Shown here: in pieces, positions 33,704 through 61,384 of the stretch | Layout of the letters: each line of letters starts with the position of its first letter | How positions within the stretch are numbered: position 1 is the stretch's first letter | Assembly: GCA_001179505.1 (NCBI GenBank) | Contig: CDMY01000469.1 | Coordinates: 6,467-70,466 of the forward strand | From: Vitrella brassicaformis CCMP3155 | Lineage: Eukaryota; Protista; Chromerida | DNA length: 64,000 nucleotides | Direction of reading: 5' to 3' | Translations under genes and position numbers: made by a program | The notes under the pieces: model-generated | The model's database searches: none | What the model was told of the DNA's origin: nothing | Seen by the model: only the letters and a program-made list of their open reading frames with translations

Positions 33704-34539
33704 ATGAACGACGACGCCCTCTCCGACGCCCAATCGAGTGCCTTCACTGCGGTGCACACAGAGATGATACAACAGGAGATGGCCCGCCATGACCAAGCAG
33801 CAGCTCATTGACGAGATCAGCGGGCAGAGAGACGAATACAAGCGGGAGAGAGATGAGTGGAAGCAGCGGTCTCAGCAGGCCGAGGCCGAATGCAGAGACT
33901 GGAAGCGGCGGTGCGAGGAGGTATACACAACCAAGCCAAAAGGCAGAGAGAAACACATCTACGCGCTGTCTGTGCGTGTCTGTCTGTCTGCAGGCCGAGG
34001 CGAAGCTGAAGGCCTTCGAGCAGGGGCCTTCGTTGGCGAGCCTCCATTGGGAGGGCGGCATGTACCACGGCAATGTCCGCAACAAGATGCCACACGGCGA
34101 GGGCACTCTGCGCACACTCGACGGCCAGAACTCACTCTACGAGGGCCAATGGGCGGACGGCAAACGAGACGGCAAAGGCAAGCAATACGCCCCATGCCAA
34201 CTGGGAAAGGAGACCAAGATCTGTCTCGTGTATGAGGGCGATTTTGTGAACGGCAAGCGACACGGCCAGGGGAAGGCCTTCTACGAGTGGCATGGTCCTG
34301 TATTGTGGTTTGATGGCGAATGGCGAGACGGCCTGGCCTACAGCGGCACCCTCTTCCGTGACGGCGACGGGGTTGGACAGAAGAATGCTGACGGCAGCCC
34401 TCGGTGGCCCATCAAGCCCATTCGATGGCAGGCCGGACAGAAGATACCCAACACCGACCTGTGTGGGTGGGGATATGCCCTGCATCAGTGCCTGCGTGAT
34501 CAGGGTGTGTCGGGATATTTCCCTGCTGGCGCACTGTGA
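33704..34539 (+). CDS. MORN copy 6; N-terminal frame break near 33788, could restart at ATG 33789
   Basis: MNDDALSDAQSSAFTAV (homologous to the copy 7 N-terminus) is out of frame with MTKQQLIDEISGQRDEY; MORN part and cap are intact. Confidence 0.75.
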
Positions 34540-39321: not shown

Positions 39322-40269
39322 ATGAGCGAACAGCACACGGACGACAGCCCCTCCGCTCAATCAAGCGCTTACACTGTGGTGGCGGCCGACATCATGCAGC
39401 AGGGGCAGGACCTTCAAAGGTCACAAGAGGCACTTGCCGCCCGGCTGACAAGACAAATGGAGGAGCTGGAGGCACGACACCGGGCGGACCGAGCAAGGGA
39501 TAGAGATGAGTGGCGACGGGAGCGCAGTGTACTTGAGGGCCGTATTCGACAGCTGGAAGCCAACTCCATTATGGTGGGCAGTCTGACCTGGGAAGACGAC
39601 CCCGAGTATCATTCACAGCCATTGAATGAAAGGTATCGCATCTACGACGGGCAGAAGCTGAATGGGCAGCCCCACGGCAGCGGCACTGTGCGGAAACCTG
39701 GCGGGTCTGTCGTATTCAGTGGTGACTGGCAACACGGCAAGAGACACGGCCGAGGGACGGAGTTCCGCGGTGACGGCCAGCTGGTGTACGACGGCGAGTG
39801 GGCCAACGGAGAGAAGACAAACAGAGGGGAGGGAAAGGTGGGCTTCATGGAGCTCAGAGACGACAAGGGACAGCTGGTGGGCTACTATCACGGCGAGACA
39901 CAAGACGGGCAGCCAAATGGCGAGGGGGAACTGCGAGACGGCCGCAACAATGCCGTCTACAAGGGCGGGTGGAAGAACGGCAAACAACACGGCCAGGGAA
40001 GAGCATACTACGACGGTTATGGTCCTGTGTTGTGGTTTGATGGCGAGTGGCGAGAGGGCCTGGCCCACAGCGGCACCCTCTTCCCTGACGGCACCTGGCA
40101 TGGAGTGAAGAATGCTGACGGCAGCCCCCAGTGTCCCATCACGCCCATTCGATGGCAGGCCGGACAGAAGATACCCAACACCGACCTCGTGCCTGGCAGC
40201 ACACGTAAGCTGCCTCAGTGCCTGCAGGGTCGGGGTCTGTCGGGATATTTCCCTGCGGATGCACTGTGA
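39322..40269 (+). CDS. MORN copy 7 (intact, intronless, 315 aa)
   Basis: Single ORF: coiled coil, MORN repeats, cap ending GLSGYFPADAL-TGA-TAG. Confidence 0.88.
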   Translation: MSEQHTDDSPSAQSSAYTVVAADIMQQGQDLQRSQEALAARLTRQMEELEARHRADRARDRDEWRRERSVLEGRIRQLEANSIMVGSLTWEDDPEYHSQPLNERYRIYDGQKLNGQPHGSGTVRKPGGSVVFSGDWQHGKRHGRGTEFRGDGQLVYDGEWANGEKTNRGEGKVGFMELRDDKGQLVGYYHGETQDGQPNGEGELRDGRNNAVYKGGWKNGKQHGQGRAYYDGYGPVLWFDGEWREGLAHSGTLFPDGTWHGVKNADGSPQCPITPIRWQAGQKIPNTDLVPGSTRKLPQCLQGRGLSGYFPADAL

Positions 40270-41542: not shown

Positions 41543-42780
41543 ATGGCGGCCACGGCGGCCGGTGGCACGGGCAAGAAGACTCTTGAGGATGACCAGTCGG
41601 AGCACCTGGCGCCCAAGCAGGTCATCGACAAGATCCGACTGGATAGGTTTCGCATTGGAGGTAGGATGGATGGTCGGCACAGGCACACACACGCAATCAC
41701 ATGACAGATCTGTCCATGTGCACGGATGTGTGGATGTGTGGGTGTGTGCAGCTGCATCTGAATCATCGTCGTCGGGAGGCGGTCAGGAGACCTTGGTTTG
41801 GGCGCTCAACAACGTCCTAAAAGGCGTTGCCGTCAATGTATGTGGCGACGGAGGGAGGGAGGGAGAGAGGAAGGGAAGAAGAGTGCCCATTCTCTTTCTT
41901 TCTGGGTGTGTGTGTGTCATCAGGTCAATAGCGAGGCGGACCACTGTGTAGAGGAGCTTGTACAGAACGTCCGGTGCGTCCACATACACACACACACACA
42001 CACAGATCCATCCATCCATCCACAGACAGACGCGCAAACACATGTATTGCCTTCTGCACATCCCATGCAGCGACGCGCAGCTGAGTCTGCCTGAGGGCGA
42101 GAAAGGTGTGTTGGAGATAAGGCTGCTGCGGAGGGACCCGCTCAACTGCATCCACAGACAAGACTGGCTGGACCAGTATGCCCGACACACACACACACAC
42201 ACACACCCCTAGCCACGTGTGTATGCCCACTTTTGTGTGTAATTGTGTGTGTGTGGTGCAGCGACATGGACGCGAAGCATCCTGTGCCTGAGGAGTGCAT
42301 CCAGGACAGAGGCTGCCTGCTGCTGGTGGGTGCTTGTGGACATCGATCGACAACATGGCTGAGAAAGAATGAGTGCGTGAATGTGTGTGTGAATGTTTGT
42401 GTGTGGTCAGGTGTACAATGAGCGGGGGTTCAGGGGCACGGATGTTGACGCCATCTGCGACCTCGGCAGGGTACCACTCATTACTACCCCCCCACTCCTC
42501 CACAGAGAGATCTCCCATGTGTGTGTGGATGATGGGTGCATGCAGTCGACCAAGAAGGATGCGGGCGGCAAGTTTGTGGGGGAGAAGGGGCAGGGCTTCA
42601 AGAGCGTCTTCAGAGTCGCTGAGTACAAACCACACACAGGCAAACCAGGCGCGCACCTCTCTCTCTCTCTGTGTGTGTGTGAGTGTGTAGGTTCGCGTAC
42701 ATTCTGTCCGACCAGCCGGACTCGCAGTACTTCTTCCGCCAGAGGAAACACGAGCACCCTGATGCCGGCGTCTGGTAACC
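41543..42780 (+). other. GHKL (HATPase_c) module of NO VEIN/sacsin type
   Basis: VIDKIRLDRFRIG N-terminal helix, ELVQN motif I, NERGF..DVDAIC motif II, GEKGQGFKSVF motif III. Confidence 0.85.
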
Positions 42781-44656
42781 ACACACACACTCCCACACAC
42801 CAACTAACCTAGAGAGGGAGATGGAGTGGTTGTGTATGTGTTGGCACAGGTTGGTGGTGCCCGACTTCATTCAGAAGGAGAGCATCCCCACAGACATCAG
42901 AGAGCTCATCAAGGTGAGCTGTGCATCCAACCTTCTTTCTCACACAAGTGTGTGTGTGTGTGTGTGTGTGGATGGGGGGCGCAGGGCAAGACCTGCATCG
43001 CTCTGTCGATCGGCACCCCCGAGAGCAGCAGGGACCCCGACGCACACTACAACACCATCTACGACAAACTCACAACCGTACGCCTCGACCACCCCACCAC
43101 ACACACATATACACACACACATCGGTCCAGCATCACCATTCATCCCTTGTCCCTTGTGTGTTCAGAAGTTGCTGCCCGAGTGTTTCCTGTTCCTGGACAA
43201 ACCGGACACCATCAAGATCTCCGCTGAGGTGCCCTTCCATCCATCCATCCATCCAGATGCACAGACGAATGGCTGCCGTCGTGTGGGTGTGCGTGCAGAG
43301 GCCGGACGGCACTCGGACGGACGAGCGTGTGTTGGAGAGGAAAGTTGTGATGCACAGCCAACAGGAGGGCTACTCGGTGACCCGCCTCACCCCCAAGACA
43401 CACGCACACACGCACAGAGAGAGGGAACCATTCACACACGCGCCCCCCTGTCTGTCTGTCTGTCTGTCTGTCCGTCCGTGTGCAGTTGGTAGTGTTGTCG
43501 TTGCGCGTTGAGGGTGGCGGTGGCGGTGGCGGTGCGGCGGCTGCGGCGGCTGCGAGTGCTGGTGCGGGCGGTGGTCTGACCATCGACCGGCCCTACCTCG
43601 TCATCGAACAGACCTTCAACGTCCCATCCAACATCGCAAAGGTCACATAGCCCTCACCCCCTCTCCCCGAGAACACACACACACACACACGCAATGGTGT
43701 GTGTGCGTGTGTGTGCAGAACACCGAGGGCCGCAAGGACGCCAAGGAGCGCACCATCTGGGTGGCCATGCTCGTCGAAGAACTCTCCACACTAATGCGTA
43801 CACACACAGGGAGAGAGAGAGAGATCGCCCCCACACACTAGATGTGTGTGCATTCTGTCTGTCTGTCTGTCTGTTTGTCTGTGTGCACATCAGAGAAGCG
43901 CGCCGAGATCGGTCGTCACAAGGCCGCCTGCAGCCGGCGGGACGGCGGCGGCGACCGCATTGCGCTCAAGGACGACACCGAACTGCCGATGGTCTTCACA
44001 TACCTGCCCACAGGCAAGCCCACACACACAGAGAGAGGGACATAGGCATATGTGTGTGGACCTCTCTCTCTGTGTGTATGTGTGTGCAGATCAGGAGCGC
44101 ACTGGCCTGCCCGTGTTGGTCAACGCTGATTGGCGGCTGGTGGCTTCGCGTAAGCAGCCAGACCTCATGGGGGTGCGTGTGTGTATCACTGCGAGTGGGT
44201 GTGTATATGTGTGTATGTGTGTGCAGGTGAGAGTTGTTCTACATCTGTGTGGAACTTCTGGCTGGCGGGCAACATCAGACACGTCTACACCAAGGTCAGT
44301 CCGCCTACACCCACACAAGTGCGTTGGTCGATCACATCTGTGCGGCTGCAGGGTTTGCACGTGCTCTCGTCCCTCCAGCAGTACGCCCACCTGCTGCCGC
44401 GATTCATACCCATGAGGTGCCTCTCCCCACCTCCCCTCCACCCTCCACACACATACCTACACCCTCTCTGTGTGTGTGCGTCTGTGTGTCTGATGGCATC
44501 GGCTGCAGCAATGTGCGCGACGTGTCGCGAGTGTTTGATCGCAATGAGGACGAAGATCGGCCGATGAGCGTCGCCGAGGAGATACTCAACGGACTCAGGT
44601 GAGCCACACCTCTGCACGCACACACACAGAGAGAGAGAGAGAGAGATCCGCGCCCC

Positions 44657-44699
<43 letters not shown>

Positions 44700-47600
44700 T
44701 ACAGGGAGGGCAGCGAGAAGCTGCTCATCCCGGGCGTCTTCACGCCCGACAGACGGGCGCTCATCGCGGCCAAGGAGGGCACAATGGCCGACACGGCATT
44801 CACCCAGTGGGCCGAATCGCTGCTCGGTAAACGCATTTCGCACACACAGACACATGGACTGGTGGACATGTGTGTGTGGATTTGGATGTCTCTGTGTGTG
44901 GTCAGGAGTCGAGAAGGTTGCCGCTTTCTATCGCAGCGAGAAGATCATCTGGCAGAAATACAGCGACAGCACAGACAAATGGTACCCGCCACACACACGG
45001 CCACTCACACATTTCTATCCCTCTCTCTCTCTCTCCGTATGTTGTGTGTAAAGGTCGGAGCGTTTGGAGTCGATCGGCGTGCGGGCGGCCACCCCGGATT
45101 TCTACGTCAAGTGCCTCAAGCACAAAGACATCAGAACGGTATAAAGACGCACCCACCCCTACACACACGCGCGCGCGCAGAGAGAGAGAGAGAGAGAGGA
45201 ATGCGTGTGTGTGTGCACAGGCGTTGAAGCGTGCCACTCGTCAGCAGTGGGTGTCGCTGTTTGTGTTCCTCTACGACCTCCCGCACATGACCTCAGAACT
45301 CGCAAAGGACGTCCCTCTCAAAGTGGTATGTCTCCGTATCATCACACCACACCTTGTGTGAGTGGATCTCTCTCTCCCTGTGTGTGTATGTGTGTGCATG
45401 TGTGCAGCGTGACGGCACCATCACGACCCACGGGAGTGTGTCGATCTACTTGCCGGGGGCGGCGGCCGTCAGCAGACTCGACAAACTCCCCATTGAGGTA
45501 CCCAATGAATCTGTGTCTTTGTGCACACACAAACGCCCATTCCTCTCTCTCCCTCTCTGTGTCTCTGTGTCTGTCCTTCTGCAGGGCATGCAGCCCAACT
45601 TCCTGCACACCGACTGCTACCCATCGGCCGCCTCAGCTGATGATGGCGACACCGACATGTCTGGGGTGGTGAGTTCTGCGGACCATGCCAAGGTGGAGGA
45701 CTTCTTCGACAGAAGCATGAGGATCACACACTTGTATGGATTGTCGAAGGCACCACAGACACACACACATGGATGGATTGTGTGCCTTGGGGTGTGGGTG
45801 GGTGCAGCAAGATCGTAGGGTTCCTGCGGGACCTCATCGCGCGTGTTGGGAGAGGCAATGCCACAGCGCAGAAGAGGGCACAGGTACACACACACATCAA
45901 CGCACACGCACACACACACACAGCCATACACACGTGCCTGTGGATGTATGTGTGTGTGCAGGTGTTCTGGTGGTGCTACGACGCTTACTTGGCGTCCAAG
46001 GCCGCGAACGACAGCGACGCCAAACGGACCACACTCATGTGTGCCCCCCCCCCCCCCNNNNNNNNNNNNNNNNNNNNNNNNNNNNNNNNNNNNNNNNNNN
46101 NNNNNNNNNNNNNNNNNNNNNNNNNNNNNNNNNNNNNNNNNNNNNNNNNNNNNNNNNNNNNNNNNNNNNNNNNNNNNNNNNNNNNNNNNNNNNNNNNNNN
46201 NNNNNNNNNNNNNNNNNNNNNNNNNNNNNNNNNNNNNNNNNNNNNNNNNNNNNNNNNNNNNNNNNNNNNNNNNNNNNNNNNNNNNNNNNNNNNNNNNNNN
46301 NNNNNNNNNNNNNNNNNNNNNNNNNNNNNNNNNNNNNNNNNNNNNNNNNNNNNNNNNCCCCCCTCCCTCCCCATCGAACACACACATAGGGAGAGAGAGA
46401 GGGGGAGGGAGAGGTGCAGACGCACCCATGTGTGTTTGTGTTTGTGTGTCCGCCAGAGAGATATTGGGCAACGATCTCCGTGTGGACCAGAAGGGCAAAG
46501 CCGTCGACTCGGGCACAGTCATCTACCTCCCAAAGAAAGACGGTGCCCCCTCCCCCACCCAAATACACACATACAGAGGCATGTACGCGCATCCCTCTCT
46601 GTCCCTCTCTCCCTCTGCGTGTGTCTGTGTCTGTGTGCGTCTTGGTGAAGGTGTGTGGCCTCTGCTGTTCCCCCACATCTCCATATCCCTGCACGACGCC
46701 TTCATGACGGAGCGACCACCACACATGCGGGACACACACGCGGCCAAGTACGCCCCCGCCCCCTACACACACACACACAGCTGCACAGATGGATAGATGG
46801 GTGTGTGTGTGTAGGGTGGCCCTGTCGACGTCTCTGCGAAATGTGTGTGACGTGCCTTCGTACGGGGACCCGCTGTGGCACACTATGGTGGCGGGCAAGT
46901 AAGACCACACACACACACACACACGTGCTTCTCCCTCTCCATCCATCCCTCCCTCCCTGTCTGTCTGTGCTTGTATGGTTGTCTGTCAGCTTCAAGGACC
47001 TACCGCACTTCAGGGGTGCTGGGCTTGAGGACCGAATTGCTGAAATTGCCAAGCTCAAACGACTGTCACCTGCCTGGTAGGGCAACCAATGCACACACAT
47101 GCGTGTGTCTGTGTTCACCATGTCCCTCCCCCACCTACCTTTCTCTCTGTGTGTGTGTGTGTGTGTCAGGTGGTCGTTCGGTTTGCCCCACAAAAATGAG
47201 AGTGTGTCGGCCGAGGTGAAAAAGATCACAGACATCCTCCAGCAGAAGACGCCCCCCAGAGATGCAGGTAGGTGTCTATGTATGTGTGACTGTGACACAC
47301 TAAGCCCACAATCGACCTGTGGATCTCCCCCTCTCCCTCCCCCTCTCTCTCTGTCTCTGCGCGTGTGTGTGTGCACAGATCGTGTGCTGGCCGATCCCAG
47401 AAGTGGACACACCTTCTTCAGAAACGAAGTCTATCGGGTTAGTAACCCCCTAACCCACCCCCCGAATCACACCCACCCCCGCCACACGTGTGCATGTGGT
47501 GTGTGTATATGGTGCAGACGCCCATCTGCCCTCCCTTTGTGGGTGATCGCTTCCGCGAGGCCGTCAGGAGCAACACACTCGACCCTGCAAAGGTGACCGA

Positions 47601-47746
47601 GTGGTGCGTGTCCACATGGGTCTGTGTGTGGGTGTGTGTGGATGGTGGATGGTGTCATGTTTGTTTGTCAGTGTGAGAGGGACGCCATGTCGGATGAGAA
47701 CACGATAGAGATCATCGTGACCATCCTCAAGTGACCCATACAGACA

Positions 47747-47781
<35 letters not shown>

Positions 47782-50700
47782 GGGAGGAGAGAGAGAGGGC
47801 GACACGTGTGTGTGTGTGTGTCCTAATGGCTCGTGGATGTGTTGAGTGCAGGTGGCTTCACCACAACCCCGAGCTCTTCTTCGCCCGGGTGTACCCCGAT
47901 GGGGCCCCCATGTCGTCAGAGGCGCACAAACACTTCGACTCAGAAATCGCGTATGTCAAGACGCAACCATACACACAGAGAGAGGGGGAGGGGAGGCCCT
48001 CTCTATGTGTCTGCTGGTGTGAACATTGCAACAGGTACTTCGCGCACTATGCCCCCTGGCTGCCGGCCACCATCACCACCCCACACACACAGCGAGCGAT
48101 CCAGCAGCAGCAGCATGGACCACGGCCTGCTGCAGGTGCGCACACACCCTCCCCACCCTAACACACACACATGAAGAGAGAGAGGGTCCGTGTGTGTGTG
48201 TGTTGGGTGTAGGTGGTGGGCGCGGTGCTGGCCGAGGGCGTGGTGTTGCTCCTGCTGCTGCTGCCGCTGCTGCCGCTGGTGGGGCTGGTGGCCCCTCTCA
48301 GCAGCCTGCTGCAGGCACTGTCCGGCACATTTGGTGCCCGCCTTGTTTGGTGTTCGCCAAAGGTACCAAGATCATTGTCTGTGGTGGATGGGGGGATGCG
48401 TGTGAGGGATGGATGTTGTGTGGGTGTGTGTAGGTGTGTTTGATGGTGCTGGTGTGCCGATTCTGGACCTGCCGCAAGCCGACGTTGACGCACTCAGGTA
48501 CGCAATCCACCCACCCCACACACAAACAGGGGTTCACACGCTGAGGGGCGTATAAGTGTCAAATATGTGTGTGTGTGTGTTGGTAGGGCGTTGGATCGTG
48601 ACCGTCCTGGGGATTGGGGTCTGGGGCTGACCATCCACGAGAAACCGACGGCAAACGACCTCATCAACAAGTATACCCACACAGACACAGACACAGAGAG
48701 GGAGGGAGGGAGAGAGAGAGAGATGCCTGGTGTCCATCTATCTGTGTGGTGTCAGGTTGCGTGCCATCCGGAAGTACCAGCAGTTCTTCGGCTCCGTCCC
48801 CCGGCTGCGCATGCAGGTGATACTCGACGTCGTCAAGGCCGTCTACACATTGCTGAGCGGCGACGACTACAAAGACGACCACGTAAGCTGAGCATCGCGC
48901 GTGTTGAGTGTTGAGTGTTGCCTCTCACTCTGTGCGTGGGTGTGGGGTGTGGGGGAGATGGATTGTTACAGGGCCGCATCAAGCAGTATTTTGAGAGCCG
49001 CAATGCAAGCGATGCGCTGATCTACACAGACCAGCATCAGCACCAGCAGCAGCATGGAGAGCGAGATGACGCCAGTGCAACGCCATCACACACATGGATC
49101 ACACTCAGCGTACTTACGTCCACTCAGAGAGAGAGAGAGAGAGAGACGTGTGTGTGTGTGTGTGTTGTGTGGTCTATAGGAAGCGTCATGGACCGGTGAG
49201 GGCTCGTCAGTGCCTGGGCTGCGGCTGAAGGACCTCTACAGCACGCCAGCCAAGTGCAAAGACTTCTTCACCAAAGTCCTGCAGGTGCCCCTCTCCCCAT
49301 CACCCCCCCCCCCCCNNNNNNNNNNNNNNNNNNNNNNNNNNNNNNNNNNNNNNNNNNNNNNNNNNNNNNNNNNNNNNNNNNNNNNNNNNNNNNNNNNNNN
49401 NNNNNNNNNNNNNNNNNNNNNNNNNNNNNNNNNNNNNNNNNNNNNNNNNNNNNNNNNNNNNNNNNNNNNNNNNNNNNNNNNNNNNNNNNNNNNNNNNNNN
49501 NNNNNNNNNNNNNNNNNNNNNNNNNNNNNNNNNNNNNNNNNNNNNNNNNNNNNNNNNNNNNNNNNNNNNNNNNNNNNNNNNNNNNNNNNNNNNNNNNNNN
49601 NNNNNNNNNNNNNNNCCCCCCCCCCCCCTAACACACACACACACATGCACGTGCCTGTGTGTTGTGTGGTAAGGTGTCGGAGTTGCCTCCCCTCTCTGTC
49701 TACTGCGACCGCTATCTCGCCATCCAGCGCACACTCACACACACAGACGACGACAAGGACGACGCTGAACAAATGGACGAAAACAGGTGGGAATGCACAC
49801 ACACAGAGAGAGTGGATAAATGTGTGTGTGTGTGTGTGTGGTGTAGGCGGCAGGCGTTGTTCAAGCAGCTGGAGAGTGCATTCGGCAACATACTCATGTG
49901 GCTCGAGAGTAATATGAGCAAATGCCCCCCACCCCTCCCACAACCACACCTGTCGATGTGTGTGTGTGTGTGTGTGGATGCGTGTCTGTGCAGAGGACTC
50001 CTCCATCAGTCTGCCTTCGGCCTTCGTGTCGTCGGCCATGGTGCCCATAGCCTGGGAAGACGGAACCATCGTCAAACTCGCCGTAAACCACACACGCCTA
50101 CGCCATCCACAGACACATACGCAGACACACACGTGTGTATGAGTCCTCCTCTTTCCCTCTCTCCCTCTCTCTCTCTGTGTGGGGGACGGCAGGCGCCATC
50201 GCGGGCGTATCGGCCGGACAGCGATCCGCCGGACAGCAATCAGCTGCGTAAGGCCTTCAGCGGCAAACTGGACTTCGTCCTCATCCCGCCCAAGCGCACC
50301 AGTAAGAAACAGAGAGAGAGAGAGAGAGGGAGAGAGAGAGACTTTCCACACACACATCACACACATCTGATGTGATGGTCAGAGGTTGTGCGTCGTTTCT
50401 ACGACAAGATGGGCGTCCGGAGGATCACCGACGTCGCCAAGGCGGAGGCCAGGGGGACCAACCCCGTGCAAGTACGTGTGTGGTGCCTGTGGTGCCTGTG
50501 TCCATTGTATGTCCCAGACACACAGAGGGAGGGAGGGAGGGAGGGGGAGAGAGATCCATGCCCCCACATGTGTGTGTGCCTTCGTCCATGCGTTCAGGTT
50601 GACGGCAGCAGCAGTGGTGTTCCGCAGCTGCTGACCCGTGGGCTGAAGGAGCACCTGTGTCGGCTCATCTTCAGCAGCTCCACACAGGGAGAGGGAGACA

Positions 50701-51532
50701 AAAAACTAGAGTGCGACCACACACGCACACACACACACATGTGGACAGGCACACAGACATCTCTATCTCCCTCCCTCCCTCCCTCCCTGTGTGTGTGTCG
50801 TTTGTGCGTGCAGGCAGCTTCTGTCTGACGGTGGTGTGCTATCGGCCATCTGTGAGGCGAAGGAGCGCTACTTCGAAGAGGTCCAGGCCGTCTACTACAT
50901 CGAACGGTCCATTGACGACACCACCGGCGGCGGCAGCAGCAGCAGCGGCCAAGGGCAGCCCCCCCACCCCCACAACCAGACAGAGCGCGTCGACAGCGCC
51001 CCAGTGGTGTGTGAGACGGCGCAGCTGCAGCTGACGTCACAGCCATACGAGCTGCTCATGCACAAGAAATTCGTACCTGGTACGCGCAGACAAACAGAGA
51101 TGGATGCATCAAAACATACACACAGATAAAGATGGTTGTGTGCAGGTGGCGTGTTGCCCCATCTTGACATCGATCTGCTCAAGTCCCTGTGCGCACAGCT
51201 GCGGGTCATCTTCGGGCTGACACACCAACAAGAGGTACGTCAGCACACACACAGAGGGAGGGAGCGACACCACCTCTGCACACACGAGGTCCGTCTGTTT
51301 GTTTGCAGGAGGAGTTGAAGTTCTTTCTGTTCGGCGGCCAGCATCGCCAAACCACCACCAGCAGCAGCAGCGGCGGTGCCACTGGTGCTGGTGGCAGTAG
51401 TGTTGGTGTGTCGGATGTGAGGATTCCCTTTGGTCTGTGGCGGAGGATCGACCAGGCCCTCAGCAAAACACACGGACAGGTACACACAGTGTGTGGGTAC
51501 GTTTTAGTGGGTGTGCAGACCAGAATATCTCC

Positions 51533-51564
<32 letters not shown>

Positions 51565-51882
51565 CGGTGGTCGTGTGTGCAGGTTTCTGGCTCGTCATCA
51601 TCCTCGGCAGCTGCTGCTGCTGCAGCTGGTGGTGGTGGTATGTCGGAGATCTCCCACAACCAGTCCATCGACCCCTCTGCACACGGTGCACACCTCACCC
51701 ACCCAACACACATTCACAGAGAGAGGAGTGGAGACAGACACAAAGTGTAAAGATGTGTGTGTGTCTGTGTGGTGTGTGGTGTGGTTTGATGATGATGATG
51801 AAGATGAAGACATGAACGACGATCCAATGGGCCAGCGGCAGCAGAAGCAGGAGACCGGACCATCGGTAACACCCTCCCCCAA

Positions 51883-51916
<34 letters not shown>

Positions 51917-52301
51917 TACACACATCCATCTCTCTGCAGGCGAAGGCCATCCTGGCGAGCAAGGCCAAGAAGGAGACCCACCCCCAACCCACCGTCGCCA
52001 AGCGCACAGTGCCGCGCATCACCGCCATCCACCGAAAGGGCGAACTGAAGGCAAGTCATGTCCACACACACACCACACACAGAGGGAGCGAGGGAGAGAG
52101 GAGGATATGTGTGTGTGTGTGACTGTGTGTGTTGTCAGTGGGAGATGCAGGTCAACCGGTGCCCCGGCGCCACCCGCGTGTTGCTCGAGATCTACGACGC
52201 CAGCGATCGCACAGCAGCTGACGCAGACGACGAGCAAGAGGTACACACACATCTGTCATTTACACGCACATGCCCTCACTGATGCATATCGCCCTCTGCC
52301 C

Positions 52302-52334
<33 letters not shown>

Positions 52335-53801
52335 GCACAGGCCCGTCCTTTGGCGCAGCTGTCGCCGCCCATTGCCGATGCGGCACCTGTGTTTGTTGTC
52401 AATCCCGAGACCGTCGAAGGGTCCGTCTGTCTGCACACACACACACGCAGAGAGAGAGGGAGAGGGAGAGAGGGGGCCTCCATATGAGCGTGCAGACACA
52501 CACAGCTGGATGTTTGGATGTGTGTGTCTGTGTCACAGGTTGGAGTTGCTGCATTTGTATGAGTTGATTGTGCGGGCCGAGTACCCACACCACAACAAGG
52601 GCGGCCGGAGGAAACACATCAAGAAATCAAGGGCACGCCAGCAGCCAGCAACACCCACCCAATGAGCCCCACTCACTCATAATGATTGCTGGCGTGTCTT
52701 TGTGTGTGTCCATGTGTGTAGGATGCCGACACGATGGACATCGACGAGGAGAGCGACCCCGACAGCCCCACACACGCCTCCGCCAGCAGCAGCAAAGTCA
52801 AAACAGAGGTGGATAACACCATGCAGCCGAATACAATGATCTGTTGTGTGTGTGTGTGTGTGTGGATCTGTGCGTGTGTGTGTCGACATGAATGCAGTTG
52901 TCGCCCTGCATGGACTTCCCCACCCCTTTGCCAGCGCCATCCTTCGTCGCAGACGGATGCACGCGCATGCCAGACGTACGCACACACACACACACCCACC
53001 GGCACAGACCCATCCACACTGACACACAGGCGTCCATCGGTGTGTGTGTGTGTGTGTGTGGTGCGCAGGGCTGGTCACCGGAGGATTTCTACGACAAACA
53101 CAAGAAGGACAAAGGTACTGATGCAGGGAGGGAGGGAGGGAGGCATACACACGAAAATGTCCTTCCATCCATCTGTGTGTGTGGTGGAGCAGAGTTGGCT
53201 CCCCTCAAGTCGGCCAAGATCAAGCTCAAGTTCTCGTCTGTCCAACACGCCAGCAGGTCAACATATACACACACACGCGGACACACAGACACACACACAC
53301 ACAGAGAGAGAGAGGCACTCTTATGCGCCGAAAGGCATCCATCTGCCCATCTCTGTGTATATGTGTATGTGTGTGTGTTTGTAGGTACGAGGTGCGGTAC
53401 TGCTTCCAGCAGACCTTCGCGGCCTTCGACCACGTCGAGGAGACCGACCGGACCACACTGGAGATCAAATTCGCGGGCGACAAGGACAAAGACAAGGCCA
53501 ACCAAACCGTCCACGCACAGGTACTCAGGTGGACAGACAGAGAGGGGATGGTGCACAGACAGACAGACACACACACACACACACAGACATGTCTTGATGT
53601 ATGTGGCGTGTGTGTGCCGTGTGTTGGTGCAGGTGCGTGCTGTCCACGGCGGCAATCCAGCCTTCTGCAGCGAGTGGTCGCCGCTCATCTCACTGTGCCC
53701 ACGGGGGTTCACCAAAATACTCAAACACTCCACTGCTGACGGTACGTTCCTCATGAGGATGGACGGATTGCATCTCTCTCACTCTCTCTCTGTCTCTCTC
53801 C

Positions 53802-53834
<33 letters not shown>

Positions 53835-54875
53835 TGTTTGGGTGGCCACAGGTCGTGTGGACGACTCCTCAGTGGTAGACGAGGGCGGCAACCTGCTGCA
53901 CACAGCCATCAAGGACGACCAGCCCATACGACACAAAGACATGGAAACCGTAAGTTGTGCCCGTCAGCCACACACACCTGACCTCACTCTCCCCCCCCCC
54001 TCTGTGTGTGTGTGTGTGTTTGTGTGTGTGTGCAGGACGCGGCACTGCACGGGGTCGCTGAGGTTCGACACAAAGGTATGTTGCAGCCTCATGGATGGAT
54101 GGATGGATGGTCGCGCATGTTCGTGTGTGGTGAATGCAGGTCGTCGTGACGAGGAGGATCTGACGTTCGAGGGCATCTCCGCGCAGGAGCGGCAGAGGAT
54201 CGAGCAGCTCATGAAGGACGACCGCACGCGCGCCGCGGGCACGCGAATCGACCCCGTACCCAGACCCCCACCGCCCCATCACACAAACACAGAGGGAGAG
54301 AGGGAGAGAGGGATCATTAGGACAGACACGGAGCACACCCACACCCATACCTCTCTGTCTGTCTGTCTCTGTGTGTGTGTATGTCGTGTGTGTAGGCTGA
54401 TGTGGTGAAGGGCTCGTTTGTGAAGTTCAAGTTTCACTGGAGCGGTGAAATCGGCGGACGAATTGGGCGCGTCTCTGAGCCACCCAACTCATCAGTAACC
54501 AAACACCCACCCTCAGACACAGACAGACCGACAGACAGAGACAGAGAGAGGGGGGGGCATCCGTGTGTGTATTGTGTGCAGGGTGAGTTTGCGTGTGACT
54601 ACTTCTACATCCTGCCGGACGTCAGTGTCTTCAAATGCAGCATCGAAGACAACCCACACGAGGCAACCACCACCACACCCTCCCCGACACACAGAGGACA
54701 GATGCTGTGTGTGTGCCTGTGTCTGTCTGTGTGCGTATTGGGTTCGTATAGGTCATTGCGCGAAGGCTGATGCGTTGGGTGCGTCTCGACTTTGTGGAGG
54801 CGATGGTCACCGTCACCCACCTGCCGCCCTTCTGTGAGGTCCCCAACCCCAGCAGAGACATACAGGCACGTGGGA

Positions 54876-54910
<35 letters not shown>

Positions 54911-55248
54911 TGTTGGTGTGTTCTATATCTCTCTGTGTGTGTGGTTGTGTGTGTAGGGAGTGCGTTCGGATCAGCTGAAGGACTACTGGTGCCGGTGCCA
55001 CCTGCGCCAGTTCGAGAAGCAGTTCATCAAGCCCAGTGAGTGCTCACCCACACAGCCCCACGCCCCCTTCCCTGTCTGTCTCTCTGCACAATGGATGTGT
55101 GTGTATGTGTGTTAGACGATCCGGCGTACAACCTGGTGCTGGAGCCACTGGAGCCAAGGCACGGCCTCTTCGCATCAAAGTAAGTACCCCAATATACACA
55201 CACACACACACACACACGAACACGCTGTGCACTGATCTGTATGTGTCG

Positions 55249-55280
<32 letters not shown>

Positions 55281-57306
55281 GAGGTACGTCGACGAGTACA
55301 ACCGGCGTCGGTTCTCGCTGAGCGGCGACTACTTCAAGGGCAAGTGGCCGGCTGCCGACATGTTCGCTGGCGGCGGTATGTATGCACAGACACAGAGAGA
55401 GAGCCTTTGTGTCAATGTCTATGTCTGTGGTGTGGTGTGTGGTAGGCGGGACGTCTATTGGCCTCACCAAAGGCGGCATGGACGTCGAATGGGCCGTCGA
55501 GCGCGTACACACACACACATCCCCCCCCCCTCCCNNNNNNNNNNNNNNNNNNNNNNNNNNNNNNNNNNNNNNNNNNNNNNNNNNNNNNNNNNNNNNNNNN
55601 NNNNNNNNNNNNNNNNNNNNNNNNNNNNNNNNNNNNNNNNNNNNNNNNNNNNNNNNNNNNNNNNNNNNNNNNNNNNNNNNNNNNNNNNNNNNNNNNNNNN
55701 NNNNNNNNNNNNNNNNNNNNNNNNNNNNNNNNNNNNNNNNNNNNNNNNNNNNNNNNNNNNNNNNNNNNNNNNNNNNNNNNNNNNNNNNNNNNNNNNNNNN
55801 NNNNNNNNNNNNNNNNNNNNNNNNNNNNNNNNNNACACACACACACATCCCCCCCCCCTCCCACACACACACACCAGCCATATCCCCCCCCCTCTCTCTC
55901 TCTGTCGATCGGTGCATCGATCAGAACGACATCGCGTGCAGCCACTGGCAGGCCAACCACCCCCACGGCACCATGTACCGCGAGGACGTCTACCGCACCC
56001 TGGACCACATCACCACCGGGGTGGAGGGCTACCCCCTCCCATTCGGCACACGCTTCCTCACGGCCAGCTCACCATGCCAGGGATTCTCCACCATCAACGT
56101 CAAGGGTACGCCCGGCGGCACACACACATGTGCACCAGTGCGTGTGTTTGTGTGTGTGTGACAGGAGGTGTGTTGGACACGGAGAACAGGAAGCTGATCC
56201 ACTCGGTGACGGCGTACCTCGACACACTGCAGCCAGAACACGTCATGTTCGGTAACCCAATGCACGCACCCACACAGAGAGAGGGAGGGAAATGCACACA
56301 TGGGCTCCACATGGACCCTTCGCACAAGTGTTGATGCTGTCTGTGTGTGTGGTGTGTATTGTGCAGAGAACGTCGTGGGCATGGTGCACGACACCAAGAA
56401 CAAGTCCTCCGACTTCTACGCCTTCCTCCTGGGCCTACTCAACAGCGGATACGGATTCAAAGCAAAGGCACCACACACCCTCACCCACATGCACCCCTCC
56501 CATATGTGTGTGTGTGTGTGGTTTAGGCGATGGTGGCGTCCAAGTACGGCTGTCCCACCATCCGGTGCAGGATCATCATCATGTGCTGGCGGTGGGACAA
56601 ACTCGAGCCGGACTGGCCAAGAGAAGTACACCCAGGTGGACACACAGACACACACACACACTTGTGTGGACACACACACACACACACACGTGTGTGTCTG
56701 CCTGGTGTCGGCGTAGGTGCCATGCCGACCATCCGTGACGCCATCAGCGACCTCCCGCCCATCCATAGCGAGCTCGGTACCCTCTCCCTCTGGATCCCCT
56801 CCACAGCGACACGCGCTCATCAATGTGTGTGCAGGTAGTGACGTCGTCACGTTGTATGAGGGCAACGAGGGCCAGCACAACCCCGACACCTCCACGTCGG
56901 CCAGTGCTGCTGCTGGTGCTTACGGCAATGGTGGTGCTAGTGGTGGTGATCTGTCGGCGTACGCCACACTGATGAGGGACCGACCGAAGCACTCGACCAT
57001 CACCGACCACCAAGTTAGTATCCTGCCCTCTCTACCCTCCCTCCCCCCCAAACACGCACATGGGTGTTGCATGCACACACAAATGGATATCTCTGTGTGG
57101 GTCTGTGTGGGTGTGTGGCCATGCAGGTCGGCGCCAACCCCTCTCAGCTGCCCCCGCTGGCGGCCATCGACCGGCCCGCCAAGACCGTCCTCTGCAGCGT
57201 CCTCGAGTGGCCATCGCGGCACCCCACGCAGACCAACCGGGTGTTCACTGTGTACGCACCATCCACCCACACACGTGTGTGGGGACATCTGTGGGTGGGC
57301 ATTTCC

Positions 57307-57340
<34 letters not shown>

Positions 57341-58723
57341 CATGCAGGAGGGAGGTGTCCCGGCTGCAGAGTTTCCCGGACTCGTATACCTTCTGTGGCG
57401 GATCGGCTTTGGCGCACTACAAGATACGTACGCCTGAAATGTGGTGTGCGTGTGGGGACTTTGTGTGTGGGGACTCTGTGTGTGTGGTTGTGGTGCAGTT
57501 GGGAATGCGGTTCCTCCGTTGCTGGCCGAGTGCATCGCTCGGCAGCACACCAACAACTTCGCCAGCCACCCTGTCGACATTCTCAATGCTGGTACGCACA
57601 CACACAGCCACCATACCCGTGCATCCGCCAGACACACATCTGTGTGTCTCCATGTGTGGTGCTGGTGCGATCAGCGTTGATGCCCGAAAGCATTGCCGAT
57701 GCCTCTGGTGCCAACTCTGGCCACGTCAAGCTGGGCGAGGTCAACCAACAGACAACTGCGGCCGCTGCTACTGCTGCTGCAGGTACACCACCGCACCCCT
57801 TCCCACCCACAAACCTACCACCAAGGCGCACATGCGTCTGTGTGTGTATCCGGGTGTGTTGTCCGTCCATCGTTGTCTTCAGCAGCGTCTTCATCTGCGT
57901 CTGGCGGTGGTGCGGCTCAGCCCAAGGCCAAGGGCAAGGCCAAGGCGTCACCGGCAGCAGCAGCAGCCGCCACAAGCCCCAAAGCCAAAGGTATTCCCCC
58001 CCCCCCCNNNNNNNNNNNNNNNNNNNNNNNNNNNNNNNNNNNNNNNNNNNNNNNNNNNNNNNNNNNNNNNNNNNNNNNNNNNNNNNNNNNNNNNNNNNNN
58101 NNNNNNNNNNNNNNNNNNNNNNNNNNNNNNNNNNNNNNNNNNNNNNNNNNNNNNNNNNNNNNNNNNNNNNNNNNNNNNNNNNNNNNNNNNNNNNNNNNNN
58201 NNNNNNNNNNNNNNNNNNNNNNNNNNNNNNNNNNNNNNNNNNNNNNNNNNNNNNNNNNNNNNNNNNNNNNNNNNNNNNNNNNNNNNNNNNNNNNNNNNNN
58301 NNNNNNNCCCCCCCCCCCCACACTCTCCCACACCCTCTCCCTCATCTGTGTATCACTGCAGGCAAGTCCAAGCCCAAAGCCAAGGCCAGCCCCTCCCCCA
58401 AGCAGCAGCAGCAGGCCAACAACAAGGGCAAGAAGCGCTCCCGCCCGCAGGAGAGCTCGGCCGAGGACGAGTCATCCGCCGAGTCGTCAAGCAACGAGGA
58501 GGAGGAGAGCTCCGCCGACAGTGACAGCAGCAGCAGCAGCAGCAGCTCTGGCGGCCAGGAGGATGGCGAGGGGGACTCGGGTGGTGAGGCCAACAACAAC
58601 AAGAAGGCCAAGGGCGGCAAGGCCAAGGCGAGCAGCAGCAGCGGCGGCAAGAAGCAGCAGCCGGCCAAGAAGAAGCAGAAGGTGGATGGCAACAACAAGG
58701 GCAAGGGGGCCAAGGGCAAATAG
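41543..58723 (+). CDS. Giant multi-exon gene: NO VEIN/sacsin-like GHKL ATPase + long spacer + FN3-like + BAH-like + C5 DNA cytosine methyltransferase + low-complexity tail (predicted single fusion)
   Basis: GHKL motifs EELVQNVRDA, YNERGFRGTDVDAICDLG, STKK..VGEKGQGFKSVF (41950-42620). MTase motifs DMFAGGGG, ASSPCQGFS, FENVVG, ASKYGCPTIRCR, REVSRLQSFPDSY, GNAVPP (55360-57530). The halves join in frame through a GC-AG intron at 52633-52721. Confidence 0.75.
46058..46357. other. Assembly gap (300 N); others at 49316-49615, 55535-55834 and 58008-58307
   Basis: All four N runs are 300 nt, sit next to C-homopolymers and lie inside introns whose flanking exons join in frame. Confidence 0.95.
55280..57560 (+). 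other. C5 cytosine methyltransferase catalytic domain (DNMT1-like)
   Basis: Motifs I, II (WAVERN), IV (PCQ with catalytic Cys), VI (ENV), VIII, TIRDAISDLP, IX and X occur in canonical order. Confidence 0.93.
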
Positions 58724-59185: not shown

Positions 59186-59347
59186 CGAAAGAGAAAGGCA
59201 GCAAAGAGCAGCCACCGCCCTCCTCCTTCCCCTCAGTGCAAAGACACAGATCGATAGGCACATTACACACGACACAGCCAACCAGCCTCGAGAGAGAGAG
59301 AGACAGATGGACACACGAGACAGACACCACGAGAGGCACACTCACTA

Positions 59348-61384
59348 TCACAGGTCATCAGCAGGAAATAATCCGCCGCAACTGCAGCTGTAGGGTATCT
59401 TCTGTCCCGCCTGCCATCGAATGGGCTTAATGGGATACTTAGGAGTGCCGTCAGCATTCTTCCGTCCATCATAGATGCCGTCCGGGAAGAGCGTACCGCT
59501 GTGGGACAGGCCCTCTCGCCATTCGCCCTGGAACCACAACACAGAACGACACTCGTCATAGTATGCCTTTCCCTGGCCATGTCGCTTGCCATATGCGAAG
59601 CTGCCTTGGTAATTGCCGTCCTTCCACTCGCCCTTGTGGATGACTCTGTTGCGGCCGTCTCGCAGTTCCCCCTCTCCATTTGGCTGCCCGTCAAGTGGTA
59701 GAAGTTCTGTTCCCACGGCATGCCCGTCGCCACTCCGTCTCCCTTCTTCTCTCCATCTTCCCAGCCGCCCTCGTAGGTCACCTTGCCGCCAGTGAGCTCC
59801 TCGCCTTTGCCGTGTCGCTTGCCGTCCTTGAAGCCGCCCTTGTAGACGACGAGACTGCGGTATCGCACTTCTCCCTCTCCATTTGGCTGCCCGTCTTGTG
59901 TCTCGCCGTGGTAGTAGTGGCCCTGCCACCGTCCCTTGTCGTCTTTGAGCTCCATGAAGCCCACCTTTCCTTTCCCTCTGTATGTCTTCTCTCCGTTGGC
60001 CCACTCGCCCTCGTACAACAGCTGGCCGTCGTTCTGCTGGAGCTCTGTCCCACGGCCGTGCGGTCTGCCGTCGAGGGTGGGGCCGTGATAGTAGCCAAGC
60101 CGCTGTCCCCTGTCGTCTCTGAGCTCCATGCCGCCCGCCGTCCCGTTGCCCTTCTTCTCTCCACCTGCCCAGCCGCCCTTATAGGTCACCTTGCCGCGAC
60201 TGAGCTCCTCACCCTCGCCGTGCCGCTTGCCGTTCACCCAGCTCCCAGTGTACTCGAGAATATGCTGCCGTGTGCTCGAATCGTAGTGCGGAAGCTCCCT
60301 GCCCTGTCCGTGCCGTTTGTTGTCTCTCCACTCGCCCTCATAGACCTTCACCATTCTCCCGTCGAGGGCTTTGTATTCGGTACCCATCTGTCCCTGCCGC
60401 TTACCATCCGCAAAGTCGCCCTCGTACACGAGACACATCTTGGTCTCCATTTGGCGCTGCTGGTTGCGCGTCTCGAATGAAGCGTATTCTTTGCCCTTGC
60501 CGTGCTTTTTGCCGTCTTTGAAATCGCCCTCATATGTCGTCTCGCCGGAGTGCTCATCGAAAACGATTCCGTAGCCATCGTATTTGCCGTCTTGCCAGTC
60601 TCCCTCGTATCGTTTGACCTTCCGGTCCGCCGTGCTCAGAAGGCCAAAGCCGTGTGGCTTCTCATTCTGCACCGTGCCGTGATAGAAACCACGATCCCAC
60701 ACCAAGTCTCGAGGCTCCCGATGCAGACTCGCCAACGTGTCCTTCTGCCCACACATAATCACACATGCAGACAGACAGACAGACAGAGACAGACAGACAG
60801 AGGGACAGACAGCCAGATGCATGCGGTTCTTGGCGAGAGTGGCTGGCTGGATGGCATGTTTGTGTACTGTACCTGCTCATGTCGAGCGCGTAGCTCGGCG
60901 TTTTCCTTGCGAAGCTCTTCGATGATTCGGTCCTTGTCCTTGACCTGAGCCTGATGATCAGCCAGCTGAGCCTGATGATCAGCCAGTCAGTCAGTGATTA
61001 GTCTCAATGAATGAAGGGCTGTTTGACAGTCACGTCAGGTCATGGCTTCCCTACCTCCAGTTTCCGCTTGTCCGCCCTCAACTCCTCTTGACTCGAGGTG
61101 AGGAAGTCAAAATACTTGTGAAACTGCTCAGCTGTCATCGATGTCTGACTGTCGGATTGCATACTCGCCGATGCACCTCCGGGGGTGTCCTGAAAGCCAA
61201 GTGGGACACACGCAGGGACAGCAATGCAGGCCAGGCTGATGTAGGCTGATGCATGCCATTGGCCTCCGGCCCCCTCTCTTACATCGGCGCGGGAAAGGAG
61301 GCGACTGATATCACCGAGGTCAACGACCACTTGGGGCTGAGAGCCCGTGCCGCTGGGCCCATGGGGGTTGCTGGGCGCACTCAT
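59348..61384 (-). pseudogene. MORN copy 8 (longest repeat array), frameshift near 59695
   Basis: Spliced N-terminal exons (MSAPSNP..., DTPGG...RKLE, DHQAQ...RHE) then MORN repeats; ~10-nt deletion between FYH and LDGQPNG relative to paralogs (YHGPTLDG). Confidence 0.8.
61126..61274 (-). repeat. 149-bp inverted repeat, right arm (covers intron 1/exon 2 of MORN copy 8)
   Basis: Reverse complement of 59037-59185. Confidence 0.92.

What the first reader, a model, noticed from the sequence alone, without database searches (positions are those of the whole stretch)
41543..58723. Candidate novel fusion: NO VEIN/sacsin-type GHKL ATPase joined to a BAH + C5 DNA methyltransferase
Seen: GHKL motifs at the 5' end, a same-strand exon chain, and a full MTase motif set at the 3' end. 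At the junction the apparent stop (52663-52665) is only 56 nt from a strong acceptor (52721), leaving no room for a promoter. AGG|GCACGC at 52633 is a phase-0 GC donor mirroring local GTACGC donors, and it joins KKSR to DADTMD in frame. Established: NOV-like proteins usually end in a DUF3883 nuclease-like domain; the related MORC GHKL ATPases act in heterochromatin silencing and occur near prokaryotic restriction-modification genes; I know of no DNMT family with this architecture. Inference: an ATP-driven clamp coupled to cytosine methylation, perhaps for silencing repeats or invading DNA.
Basis: partly seen in the sequence, partly recalled or inferred. Interest (0 to 1): 0.93.

Follow-up and report, generated by a model that had tools for sequence, protein, structure and literature searches.

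The report
GHKL ATPase fused to DNA methyltransferase
The stretch is one long, intron-rich gene of the alga Vitrella brassicaformis that joins a Tiamat/NO VEIN-type ATPase to a cytosine DNA methyltransferase; the gene model is already public (GenBank CEM15752, 2826 residues), but I found no paper that discusses this domain combination.

Summary
From ATG 41543 to the stop at 58721-58723 runs one + strand chain of about 88 short exons. It encodes a sacsin/NOV/Tiamat-type GHKL ATPase at the N-terminus and a complete C5 DNA methyltransferase at the C-terminus.

- All four N gaps lie in poly-C runs inside introns. The reading phase is compatible across all four.
- The proposed GC donor (52632|52633) and acceptor (52721|52722) bound an 89-nt intron that is typical of this gene in length, splice context, composition and self-complementarity.
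- GC donors are used elsewhere in the gene. One is proven by homology.
- The window is Vitrella brassicaformis CDMY01000469.1. The public annotation already calls a single 2826-residue product starting at 41543, with Pfam SACS and DNA_methylase hits. This is GenBank CEM15752, placed in the DNMT4 clade by an eLife 2023 survey.

The fusion is therefore probably real, but it is not a new gene model. No Pfam hit is on record for BAH, FN3 or the NOV-type nuclease. I saw no junction-spanning reads, because the read tool was lost to a filter. No paper I could search describes a GHKL-DNMT architecture, so it is a new variant of ATPase-coupled methyltransferases. The scan had noted this same stretch once before in an overlapping window, not on other DNA.

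The parts
41543..58723 (+). Whole coding span of the gene (about 88 exons; public product 2826 aa, my model about 2826-2828 aa)
   Evidence: Own exon-chain model. NCBI annotation of CDMY01000469.1 calls a + strand gene starting at locus 12222, which is window 41543, with a 2826-aa product.
41543..43228 (+). Exons 1-11: GHKL (Bergerat-fold) ATPase of the sacsin/NOV/Tiamat type. N-box in 41924-41973 and 42071-42175, NERGF in 42411-42470, GQGFKSVF in 42546-42622
   Evidence: Spliced by hand, open frame. TmtA profiles E 2.7e-6 on 42393-42809. Pfam PF25794 SACS on the annotated product. Atlas nearest clusters are SACS, a lead only.
44090..44149 (+). Exon with the LPVLVNADWRLVAS motif, a second Tiamat/NOV-family signature
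   Evidence: TmtA profile PDLC03965 positions 285-317, E 0.034, collinear with the first hit.
43299..51865 (+). About 1450-residue middle region of unknown fold, crossing assembly gaps 1 and 2; no nuclease signature
   Evidence: Exon chain. No PADLOC or Pfam hits at exon level. No DUF3883 or DUF3684 hit on record for the product. No D...EVK motif.
51940..52632 (+). Exons H-K, FN3-like by eye (unverified). Exon H ends in a GC donor; exon K ends at the GC donor of the junction
   Evidence: No Pfam support.
52633..52721 (+). The junction intron: 89 nt, GC-AG. If retained, the frame stops at TGA 52663-52665
   Evidence: Length 89 against a median of 85. A+C 0.80 in the 5' half and G+T 0.73 in the 3' half, rank 9 of 83; only 0.4% of random windows reach this. 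Donor context rank 21 of 83, acceptor rank 44 of 83. 10-bp exact inverted repeat, reached by 0.15% of shuffles. Hairpin fold typical of the gene's introns.
52722..52808 (+). Exon L, an acidic/Ser-rich linker (DADTMDIDEES...), holding the in-frame ATG 52734 that a two-gene model would need
   Evidence: Out-of-frame ATGs at 52682, 52712 and 52723 precede it.
53193..53741 (+). Exons N-P, second FN3-like stretch (unverified)
   Evidence: Read by eye. No Pfam support.
54396..55035 (+). Two of them end in GC donors (54662, 54865)
   Evidence: No Pfam BAH hit at exon level or on the annotated product. Atlas uninformative.
55284..57591 (+). C5 DNA methyltransferase catalytic domain. Motif I 55284-55375; motifs II-IV (SSPCQGFS) 55925-56105; ENV 56367-56467; motif VIII 56527-56635; IX 57348-57427; X 57499-57591
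   Evidence: blastp to phage vB_E555 methyltransferase, 92.8 bits, and to E. coli Dcm, 40.4 bits. Same letters as CEM15752 in the eLife supplement. PF00145 on the product.
56468..56526 (+). GC-AG intron proven by homology, inside the catalytic domain
   Evidence: GT-only in-frame joins would delete 28 aligned residues. The ungapped alignment across the join and the GenBank protein both use it.
57675..58723 (+). Low-complexity Lys/Ser/Glu/Ala-rich C-terminal tail with NLS-like runs, crossing gap 4, and the stop codon
46058..46357 (.). Assembly gap 1, in a poly-C run inside an intron (45962-46038 | 46457-46542); phases compatible
49316..49615 (.). Assembly gap 2, in a poly-C run inside an intron (49180-49284 | 49674-49786); phases compatible
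55535..55834 (.). Assembly gap 3, inside the intron between ...EWAVER and NDIACSHW...; nothing coding is missing
58008..58307 (.). Assembly gap 4, in a poly-C run inside an intron of the C-terminal tail; phases compatible

Best explanation
This is a single nuclear gene of Vitrella brassicaformis (GenBank protein CEM15752, 2826 aa). Its mRNA is spliced from about 88 exons. The junction is an ordinary 89-nt GC-AG intron (52633-52721) that removes the stop at 52663.

Shown: the protein has an N-terminal GHKL ATPase of the sacsin/NO VEIN/Tiamat family and a C-terminal C5 cytosine methyltransferase whose catalytic motifs are all intact. Between them lies a long undetermined region of about 1450 residues. 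No NOV/Tiamat-type PD-(D/E)xK nuclease is detectable.

Inferred mechanism: as in other GHL ATPases, ATP binding would dimerise the N-terminal domains into a clamp on nucleic acid. In this protein the effector that the clamp positions or licenses is a DNMT4-type methyltransferase rather than the family's usual nuclease. Targets such as repeats, transposons or incoming DNA would then be methylated and silenced rather than cut. The Lys-rich tail suggests nuclear localisation.
For: - One continuous exon chain in which no intron exceeds 140 nt, apart from the four N-containing ones.
- Phase is compatible across all four gaps.
- The junction intron is typical by five independent measures.
- 7 of 83 donors are GC, and one is required by homology.
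- The in-frame ATG 52734 is preceded by three out-of-frame ATGs within 52 nt.
- The public annotation was made with Augustus using RNA-seq intron evidence. It calls one 2826-aa product from 41543 with PF25794 SACS + PF00145 DNA_methylase.
- The eLife supplement puts the DNMT domain at residue 2269 of CEM15752; my model puts it at 2270.
- TmtA profile hits support the ATPase family.
- The methyltransferase aligns end to end with a phage enzyme.
- The RNA-labelled run X2 holds 0.39 of sampled words over exon K + intron + exon L, against 1.00 in DNA-like runs. The spliced expectation is 0.50.
- CDS-to-CDS distances between neighbouring annotated genes are 196-1273 nt, against 68 nt here.
Against: - No junction-spanning read or transcript contig was seen; read laying was lost.
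- The word-share test is also compatible with exon K plus a short 3' UTR.
- Vitrella is compact, with a median 92 bp between genes, and gene predictors can merge neighbours.
- If the intron is retained, the frame stops after 10 codons, and an in-frame ATG follows 13 nt after the acceptor.
- No orthologue with the same architecture could be found, because the protein searches returned nothing.
- ATPase and methyltransferase activities, and any coupling between them, are untested.
Confidence: 0.8

Rival explanations
1. Two adjacent same-strand genes, wrongly merged by the reader, by my chain model and by Augustus. One would be a NOV-like ATPase ending at TGA 52663-52665. The other would be a methyltransferase gene starting at ATG 52734.
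For: A stop lies 30 nt after the putative donor and an in-frame ATG lies 13 nt after the acceptor. The genome is compact, with a median intergenic distance of 92 bp. No junction reads were obtained. The donor is non-canonical (GC).
Against: - Only 68 nt would have to hold a 3' UTR, a poly(A) site, a promoter and a 5' UTR, whereas neighbouring CDS are 196-1273 nt apart.
- Three out-of-frame ATGs precede ATG 52734.
- The 89-nt stretch carries the full intron signature of this gene.
- GC donors are proven in the same gene.
- The join is in frame.
- The RNA-seq-hinted public model is fused.
Confidence: 0.12
2. Both forms exist. Splicing of the GC-AG intron gives the fusion. Retention of this weaker intron gives a shorter ATPase-only protein ending ...KKSRARQQPATPTQ. 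The intron would then act as a switch between isoforms.
For: GC donors are generally weaker, and retention gives a clean stop after 10 codons. Run X2's word share of 0.39 does not exclude some intron words.
Against: Every intron of this gene gives a stop when retained, so nothing singles this one out. Its donor context is better than the median. There is no isoform data.
Confidence: 0.2
3. The fusion is real but one module is a non-catalytic scaffold, for example a GHKL domain that binds but does not hydrolyse ATP. The protein would then be simply a DNMT4-type enzyme with a long targeting arm.
For: The N-box reads NVRDA rather than the usual NADDA. The G1 box reads YNERGF with no Asp, which by my memory of sacsin is family-typical. 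The methyltransferase sits on a long branch in the published tree.
Against: The catalytic Glu and Asn of the N-box and the Gly-rich G2 box are present. All methyltransferase catalytic residues are present: PC, ENV, RxR and GNAVPP.
Confidence: 0.15

Closest known systems
Tiamat (TmtA) / NO VEIN / sacsin family of GHL ATPases
   Same: The N-terminal Bergerat-fold ATPase carries the family motifs. TmtA profile hits are E 2.7e-6 and 0.034, collinear, and Pfam SACS is on record for the annotated product. A 2026 preprint reports that family members swap their C-terminal effector and that prokaryotic ones often sit next to DNA methyltransferases.
   Different: No PD-(D/E)xK (DUF3883) nuclease is detectable. 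The C-terminal effector is a C5 DNA methyltransferase, which is not among the effector types listed in that preprint: helicases, HNH, Schlafen/peptidase, S1, LOTUS, het-6, CDK, J/HEPN.
DNMT4 clade (fungal RID/Masc1; diatom DNMT4)
   Same: A published tree of DNMT domains places CEM15752 with diatom and Tribonema DNMT4 proteins. All C5 methyltransferase motifs are present.
   Different: Diatom DNMT4 proteins are a lone catalytic domain or carry a chromodomain. This one has a roughly 2270-residue N-terminal extension with a GHKL ATPase. Its branch is long (3.45) and support is moderate (78.6/92). An MMETSP survey found no DNMT4 outside diatoms.
DNMT5 (SNF2 ATPase-coupled maintenance methyltransferase)
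   Same: An ATPase and a C5 methyltransferase sit in one polypeptide. In Cryptococcus the ATPase is needed for methylation, as cited.
   Different: The ATPase there is SNF2, a DNA translocase, and lies C-terminal. Here it is a GHKL clamp-type ATPase and lies N-terminal. The DNMT clades differ too. This is a functional analogue only.
MORC GHKL ATPases acting with DNA methylation pathways
   Different: MORC proteins are separate polypeptides from the methyltransferases and belong to another GHKL subfamily. Here the best profile matches are TmtA/SACS, not MORC.
DNMT1 / Dim-2 / CMT (BAH-bearing methyltransferases)
   Same: DNMT4 and DNMT1/Dim-2 are related clades.
   Different: No BAH, RFTS or CXXC Pfam hit is on record for the product. 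The motif VIII-IX spacer is about 150 aa, like bacterial enzymes. The published tree does not place it in DNMT1.

Membership tests
C5 cytosine DNA methyltransferase (PF00145) | Motifs I (FxGxG), IV (PC), VI (ENV), VIII (RxR), IX and X, in canonical order in one reading frame | tested here: met
   The spliced model aligns over residues 9-323 of 329 of a phage C5 methyltransferase, 92.8 bits. PF00145 is on record for the annotated product.
DNMT4 clade | Phylogenetic placement of the catalytic domain with RID/diatom DNMT4 | not tested
   Taken from the published tree (PMC10538959 supplement: support 78.6/92, long branch). I had no reference sequences with which to rebuild it.
DNMT1 family | RFTS, CXXC and paired BAH domains N-terminal to the catalytic domain | tested here: not met
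   Precomputed Pfam hits for the 2826-aa product list only SACS and DNA_methylase.
BAH domain (PF01426) | Profile match to BAH | tested here: not met
   No hit at exon level at E up to 10 and none on record for the product. A divergent BAH is not excluded.
Fibronectin type III (PF00041) | Profile match to fn3 | tested here: not met
   No hit at exon level and none on record for the product. The resemblance is by eye only.
Tiamat / NO VEIN (TmtA) | N-terminal Hsp90-like GHL ATPase with the family motifs | tested here: met
   Five TmtA profiles hit exon 42546-42622, best E 2.7e-6. A second, collinear hit covers 44090-44149. PF25794 SACS is on record for the product.
Tiamat / NO VEIN (TmtA) | Central DUF3684 region | tested here: inconclusive
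   A long middle region exists, but there is no profile hit at exon level and no DUF3684 hit on record. PF25794 may cover part of it.
Tiamat / NO VEIN (TmtA) | C-terminal PD-(D/E)xK nuclease (DUF3883) | tested here: not met
   No DUF3883 hit on record and no D...E-V-K type motif in the model.
Sacsin proper | [quoted passage not shown] | tested here: not met
   Only one ATPase region was found. No DnaJ or HEPN hit is on record.
DNMT5 | SNF2-family ATPase and RING fused to the methyltransferase | tested here: not met
   No SNF2 or RING Pfam hit is on record.

The most novel reading that the evidence does not exclude
A member of the Tiamat/NO VEIN immune ATPase family has exchanged its nuclease for a DNMT4-type cytosine methyltransferase. 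This would give an ATP-gated clamp that marks recognised DNA (repeats, transposons, incoming viral DNA) by methylation instead of cutting it. It would be a second, independent invention of an ATPase-dependent DNA methyltransferase besides DNMT5.
Probability: 0.35. Interest if true: 0.8.

Novelty: new variant of a known kind. Interest (0 to 1): 0.55.

Why it matters
ATPase-coupled DNA methylation is so far known from DNMT5, which uses an SNF2 ATPase. GHKL ATPases such as MORC act beside methylation pathways as separate proteins. A single polypeptide with a Tiamat/NOV-type GHKL ATPase and an intact DNMT4-type methyltransferase would link two things: a family now being described as a conserved antiviral ATPase-nuclease, and epigenetic silencing.

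It would also give an experimentally approachable case of an effector swap from cutting to marking. It extends DNMT4-type enzymes to the closest photosynthetic relatives of apicomplexans. Whether Vitrella has 5mC is not recorded in the survey I read.

The limits are clear. It is one species, the gene model is already public, and nothing is known about its activity.

Tried and rejected
- Word-share test: the test with the look-up of sequencing runs on exon K + intron + exon L gave 0.39 for an RNA-labelled run. That rules out full retention in its contigs but does not prove the splice.
- Protein-database routes from exon-level references all failed. The representative search with exon 50814-51079 gave only a low-complexity hit. 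Three homologous-protein searches found nothing.
- Collection scans: the spliced junction 37-mer and a DNMT exon were not found in metagenome contigs. The genome-contig scan returned a false relative caused by translated intron sequence.
- Exon-level Pfam and PDB searches are too weak. The Atlas search of the BAH-like piece was uninformative.
- The spliced protein has no reference, so I did not submit it to Pfam, PDB, structure prediction or fold search.
- Rejected ideas: a gene boundary hidden in a long non-coding stretch, because none exceeds 140 nt. A canonical GT alternative for the junction, because 52569|52722 is in frame but cuts into the FN3-like stretch of exon K and has a poor donor. 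Spliced-leader trans-splicing at the acceptor, which to my knowledge is not reported for chromerids and is not mentioned in the genome paper.
Full report
**What is there.** The window is GC-rich (about 0.57) eukaryotic DNA with very short exons and introns. I spliced the first eleven exons by hand. I then built an exon-chain model by dynamic programming that allowed GT and GC donors, run separately on the five stretches between the four N gaps. From ATG 41543, which has an in-frame stop 51 nt upstream, to the stop at 58721-58723 the chain has about 88 exons (median 89 nt) and 83 modelled introns (median 85 nt). It encodes about 2826-2828 residues. This model is forced to chain exons, so on its own it is not evidence of a fusion.

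**The gaps.** All four 300-N gaps are flanked by poly-C. Each begins 17-31 nt after a predicted donor and ends 54-99 nt before the next predicted acceptor. Without the Ns the four introns would measure 118, 89, 120 and 71 nt, which is the normal range for this gene. The reading phases of the independently predicted chains fit across all four gaps (chance 1/81). Across gap 3 the protein aligns to a homologue without any gap. The gaps are most simply unresolved homopolymer runs inside introns. Small exons hidden in gaps 1, 2 and 4 cannot be formally excluded.

**The two ends.**
- C-terminal domain: the spliced C-terminal model (459 aa) aligns over residues 9-323 of the 329-aa DNA cytosine methyltransferase of Burkholderia phage vB_E555 (92.8 bits). 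It aligns more weakly to E. coli Dcm. Motifs I (DMFAGGGG), IV (SSPCQGFS), VI (ENV), VIII (PTIRCR), IX (RLQSFPD) and X (GNAVPP) appear in order.
- N-terminal domain: the N-terminus carries the GHKL N-box (ELVQN..DA), NERGF and GQGFKSVF.
- Family of the ATPase: five PADLOC profiles of the Tiamat protein TmtA hit the last of these exons (best E 2.7e-6). A second, collinear TmtA hit covers the exon with LPVLVNADW (E 0.034). A language-model search pointed to Pfam SACS (sacsin/Nov) clusters, as a lead only.

**The junction.** Exon K ends at 52632 in phase 0, GC lies at 52633-52634, TGA at 52663-52665, the acceptor AG at 52720-52721, and the join reads KKSR|DADTMD. The 89-nt stretch behaves like the gene's other introns in every respect I could measure:
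- Length is 89 nt against a median of 85.
- The 5' half is A+C-rich (0.80) and the 3' half G+T-rich (0.73). That ranks 9 of 83 introns, and only 0.4% of random 89-nt windows of the whole 64 kb reach it.
- Ignoring the dinucleotide itself, the donor context ranks 21 of 83 and the acceptor 44 of 83. Only 25 of 1109 GC dinucleotides in the gene span score as well.
- It holds a 10-bp exact inverted repeat between its two halves, reached by 0.15% of shuffles, while exons reach at most 9 bp.
- It folds into the hairpin typical of these introns.

GC donors are not exotic in this gene: 7 of 83 donors are GC. The one at 56467|56527 is required, because GT-only in-frame joins would delete 28 residues that align to the phage enzyme.

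A two-gene reading would need a 3' UTR, a promoter and a 5' UTR within 68 nt. Three out-of-frame ATGs lie in front of the in-frame ATG 52734. No non-coding stretch in the chain exceeds 140 nt.

**RNA evidence.** This is the weak point. Two runs labelled RNA hold 0.15 of the sampled words of 50500-55500, where exon-internal words make up 0.36. Over exon K + intron + exon L, run X2 holds 0.39 of the words, while DNA-like runs hold 1.00. The expectation is 0.50 if spliced and 0.25 for a single exon. This argues against full retention of the intron, but it does not prove the splice.

**Identity of the locus.** The supplement of Funabiki and colleagues (eLife 2023, PMC10538959) contains 'CEM15752_Vitrella_2269-2619'.
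- Its 251 aligned letters equal my spliced model, including the join across gap 3 and the GC-donor join. The only difference is one Gly from a NAGNAG acceptor at 56163-56167.
- In my model the same motif starts at residue 2270.
- A look-up with the intronless MORN-repeat gene 39322-40266 returned the NCBI record GCA_001179505.1, contig CDMY01000469.1 (window = record minus 6466).
- That annotation calls a + strand gene starting exactly at window 41543, with a product of 2826 residues. The Pfam hits on record are PF25794 SACS and PF00145 DNA_methylase, and nothing else.
- That annotation was made with Augustus, using strand-specific RNA-seq as intron evidence.

The fused model is therefore public since 2015, and my independent model reproduces it to within two residues. 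Neighbouring annotated coding regions are 196-1273 nt apart, although the genome paper gives a median of 92 bp between genes.

**What is not supported.**
- No BAH or fn3 hit exists for the annotated product or at exon level. These two domains rest on reading by eye.
- The nuclease that defines NOV/Tiamat (DUF3883) is not detected.
- The other note's 'DNMT1-like' label does not fit. The published tree places the domain with diatom and Tribonema DNMT4 proteins, on a long branch with moderate support.

**Comparison and novelty.**
- A 2026 preprint on Tiamat catalogues effector swaps in this ATPase family and notes methyltransferase neighbours in prokaryotes, but it lists no methyltransferase fusion.
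- The companion NOV preprint, two DNMT surveys and a full-text search for the accession give no description of the N-terminal part.
- Diatom DNMT4 proteins are a lone catalytic domain or carry a chromodomain.
- The closest functional analogue is DNMT5, where an SNF2 ATPase is needed for methylation.

I therefore class this as a new variant of a known kind: an already deposited gene whose architecture is unreported. The mechanism, an ATP-dependent dimerising clamp that delivers methylation instead of cleavage, is inference from family behaviour and is untested.

**Verdict.** I put the probability that the locus is one gene giving the fused protein at about 0.8, and that it works as an ATP-gated methyltransferase at about 0.35. 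The scan had noted the same stretch once before in an overlapping window (s1-233244), not on other DNA.

Noticed in passing
41543-58723, all 83 modelled introns: The introns have an A+C-rich 5' half (mean 0.62) and a G+T-rich 3' half (0.68), often (AC)n against (GT)n. Each can therefore pair its two ends. 35% fold with z below -2, and the longest exact inverted repeat has a median of 7 nt against 5 in exons. This resembles the AC/GT-bridged introns described in teleost fish (my memory, not checked).
   Followed up: partly
44013, 47962, 52050, 52632, 54662, 54865, 56467 (last exon bases): Seven of 83 donors are GC, all GCA[AC]... This is about 8%, far above the roughly 1% usual in eukaryotes. 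One is proven by homology and by the GenBank protein.
   Followed up: partly
46058-46357, 49316-49615, 55535-55834, 58008-58307: All four assembly gaps sit in poly-C runs inside introns. The flanks of gap 3 repeat the same ACACACATCCCCCCCCCCTCCC motif, so that gap may be an unmerged overlap rather than missing sequence.
   Followed up: yes
56163-56167: Tandem NAGNAG acceptor (CAG|GAG|). The GenBank model uses the upstream AG (KGGVLD) and my model the downstream one (KGVLD).
   Followed up: yes
51686-51803: My model bridges exon 51583-51685 to 51804-51865 through a doubtful 9-nt exon. A single 118-nt GT-AG intron is also in frame and looks more natural. A 12-nt exon at 47794-47805 and an optional 78-nt exon at 52898-52975 are equally uncertain.
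   Followed up: partly
39322-40269 (+), 33808-34539 (+), 59263-60822 (-): MORN-repeat genes flank the locus on both sides. The one at 39322-40269 is intronless and annotated as a 315-aa protein. The one on the minus strand converges on the 3' end of the methyltransferase gene, about 540 nt away.
   Followed up: partly
42471-42545 (intron read in frame): Translated intron sequence produced false homology: ITTPPLLHRE matched a bacterial oxidoreductase-like gene (L003), and designed ankyrin repeats in the PDB. This is a caution for searches with stop-free pieces that run through introns.
   Followed up: yes
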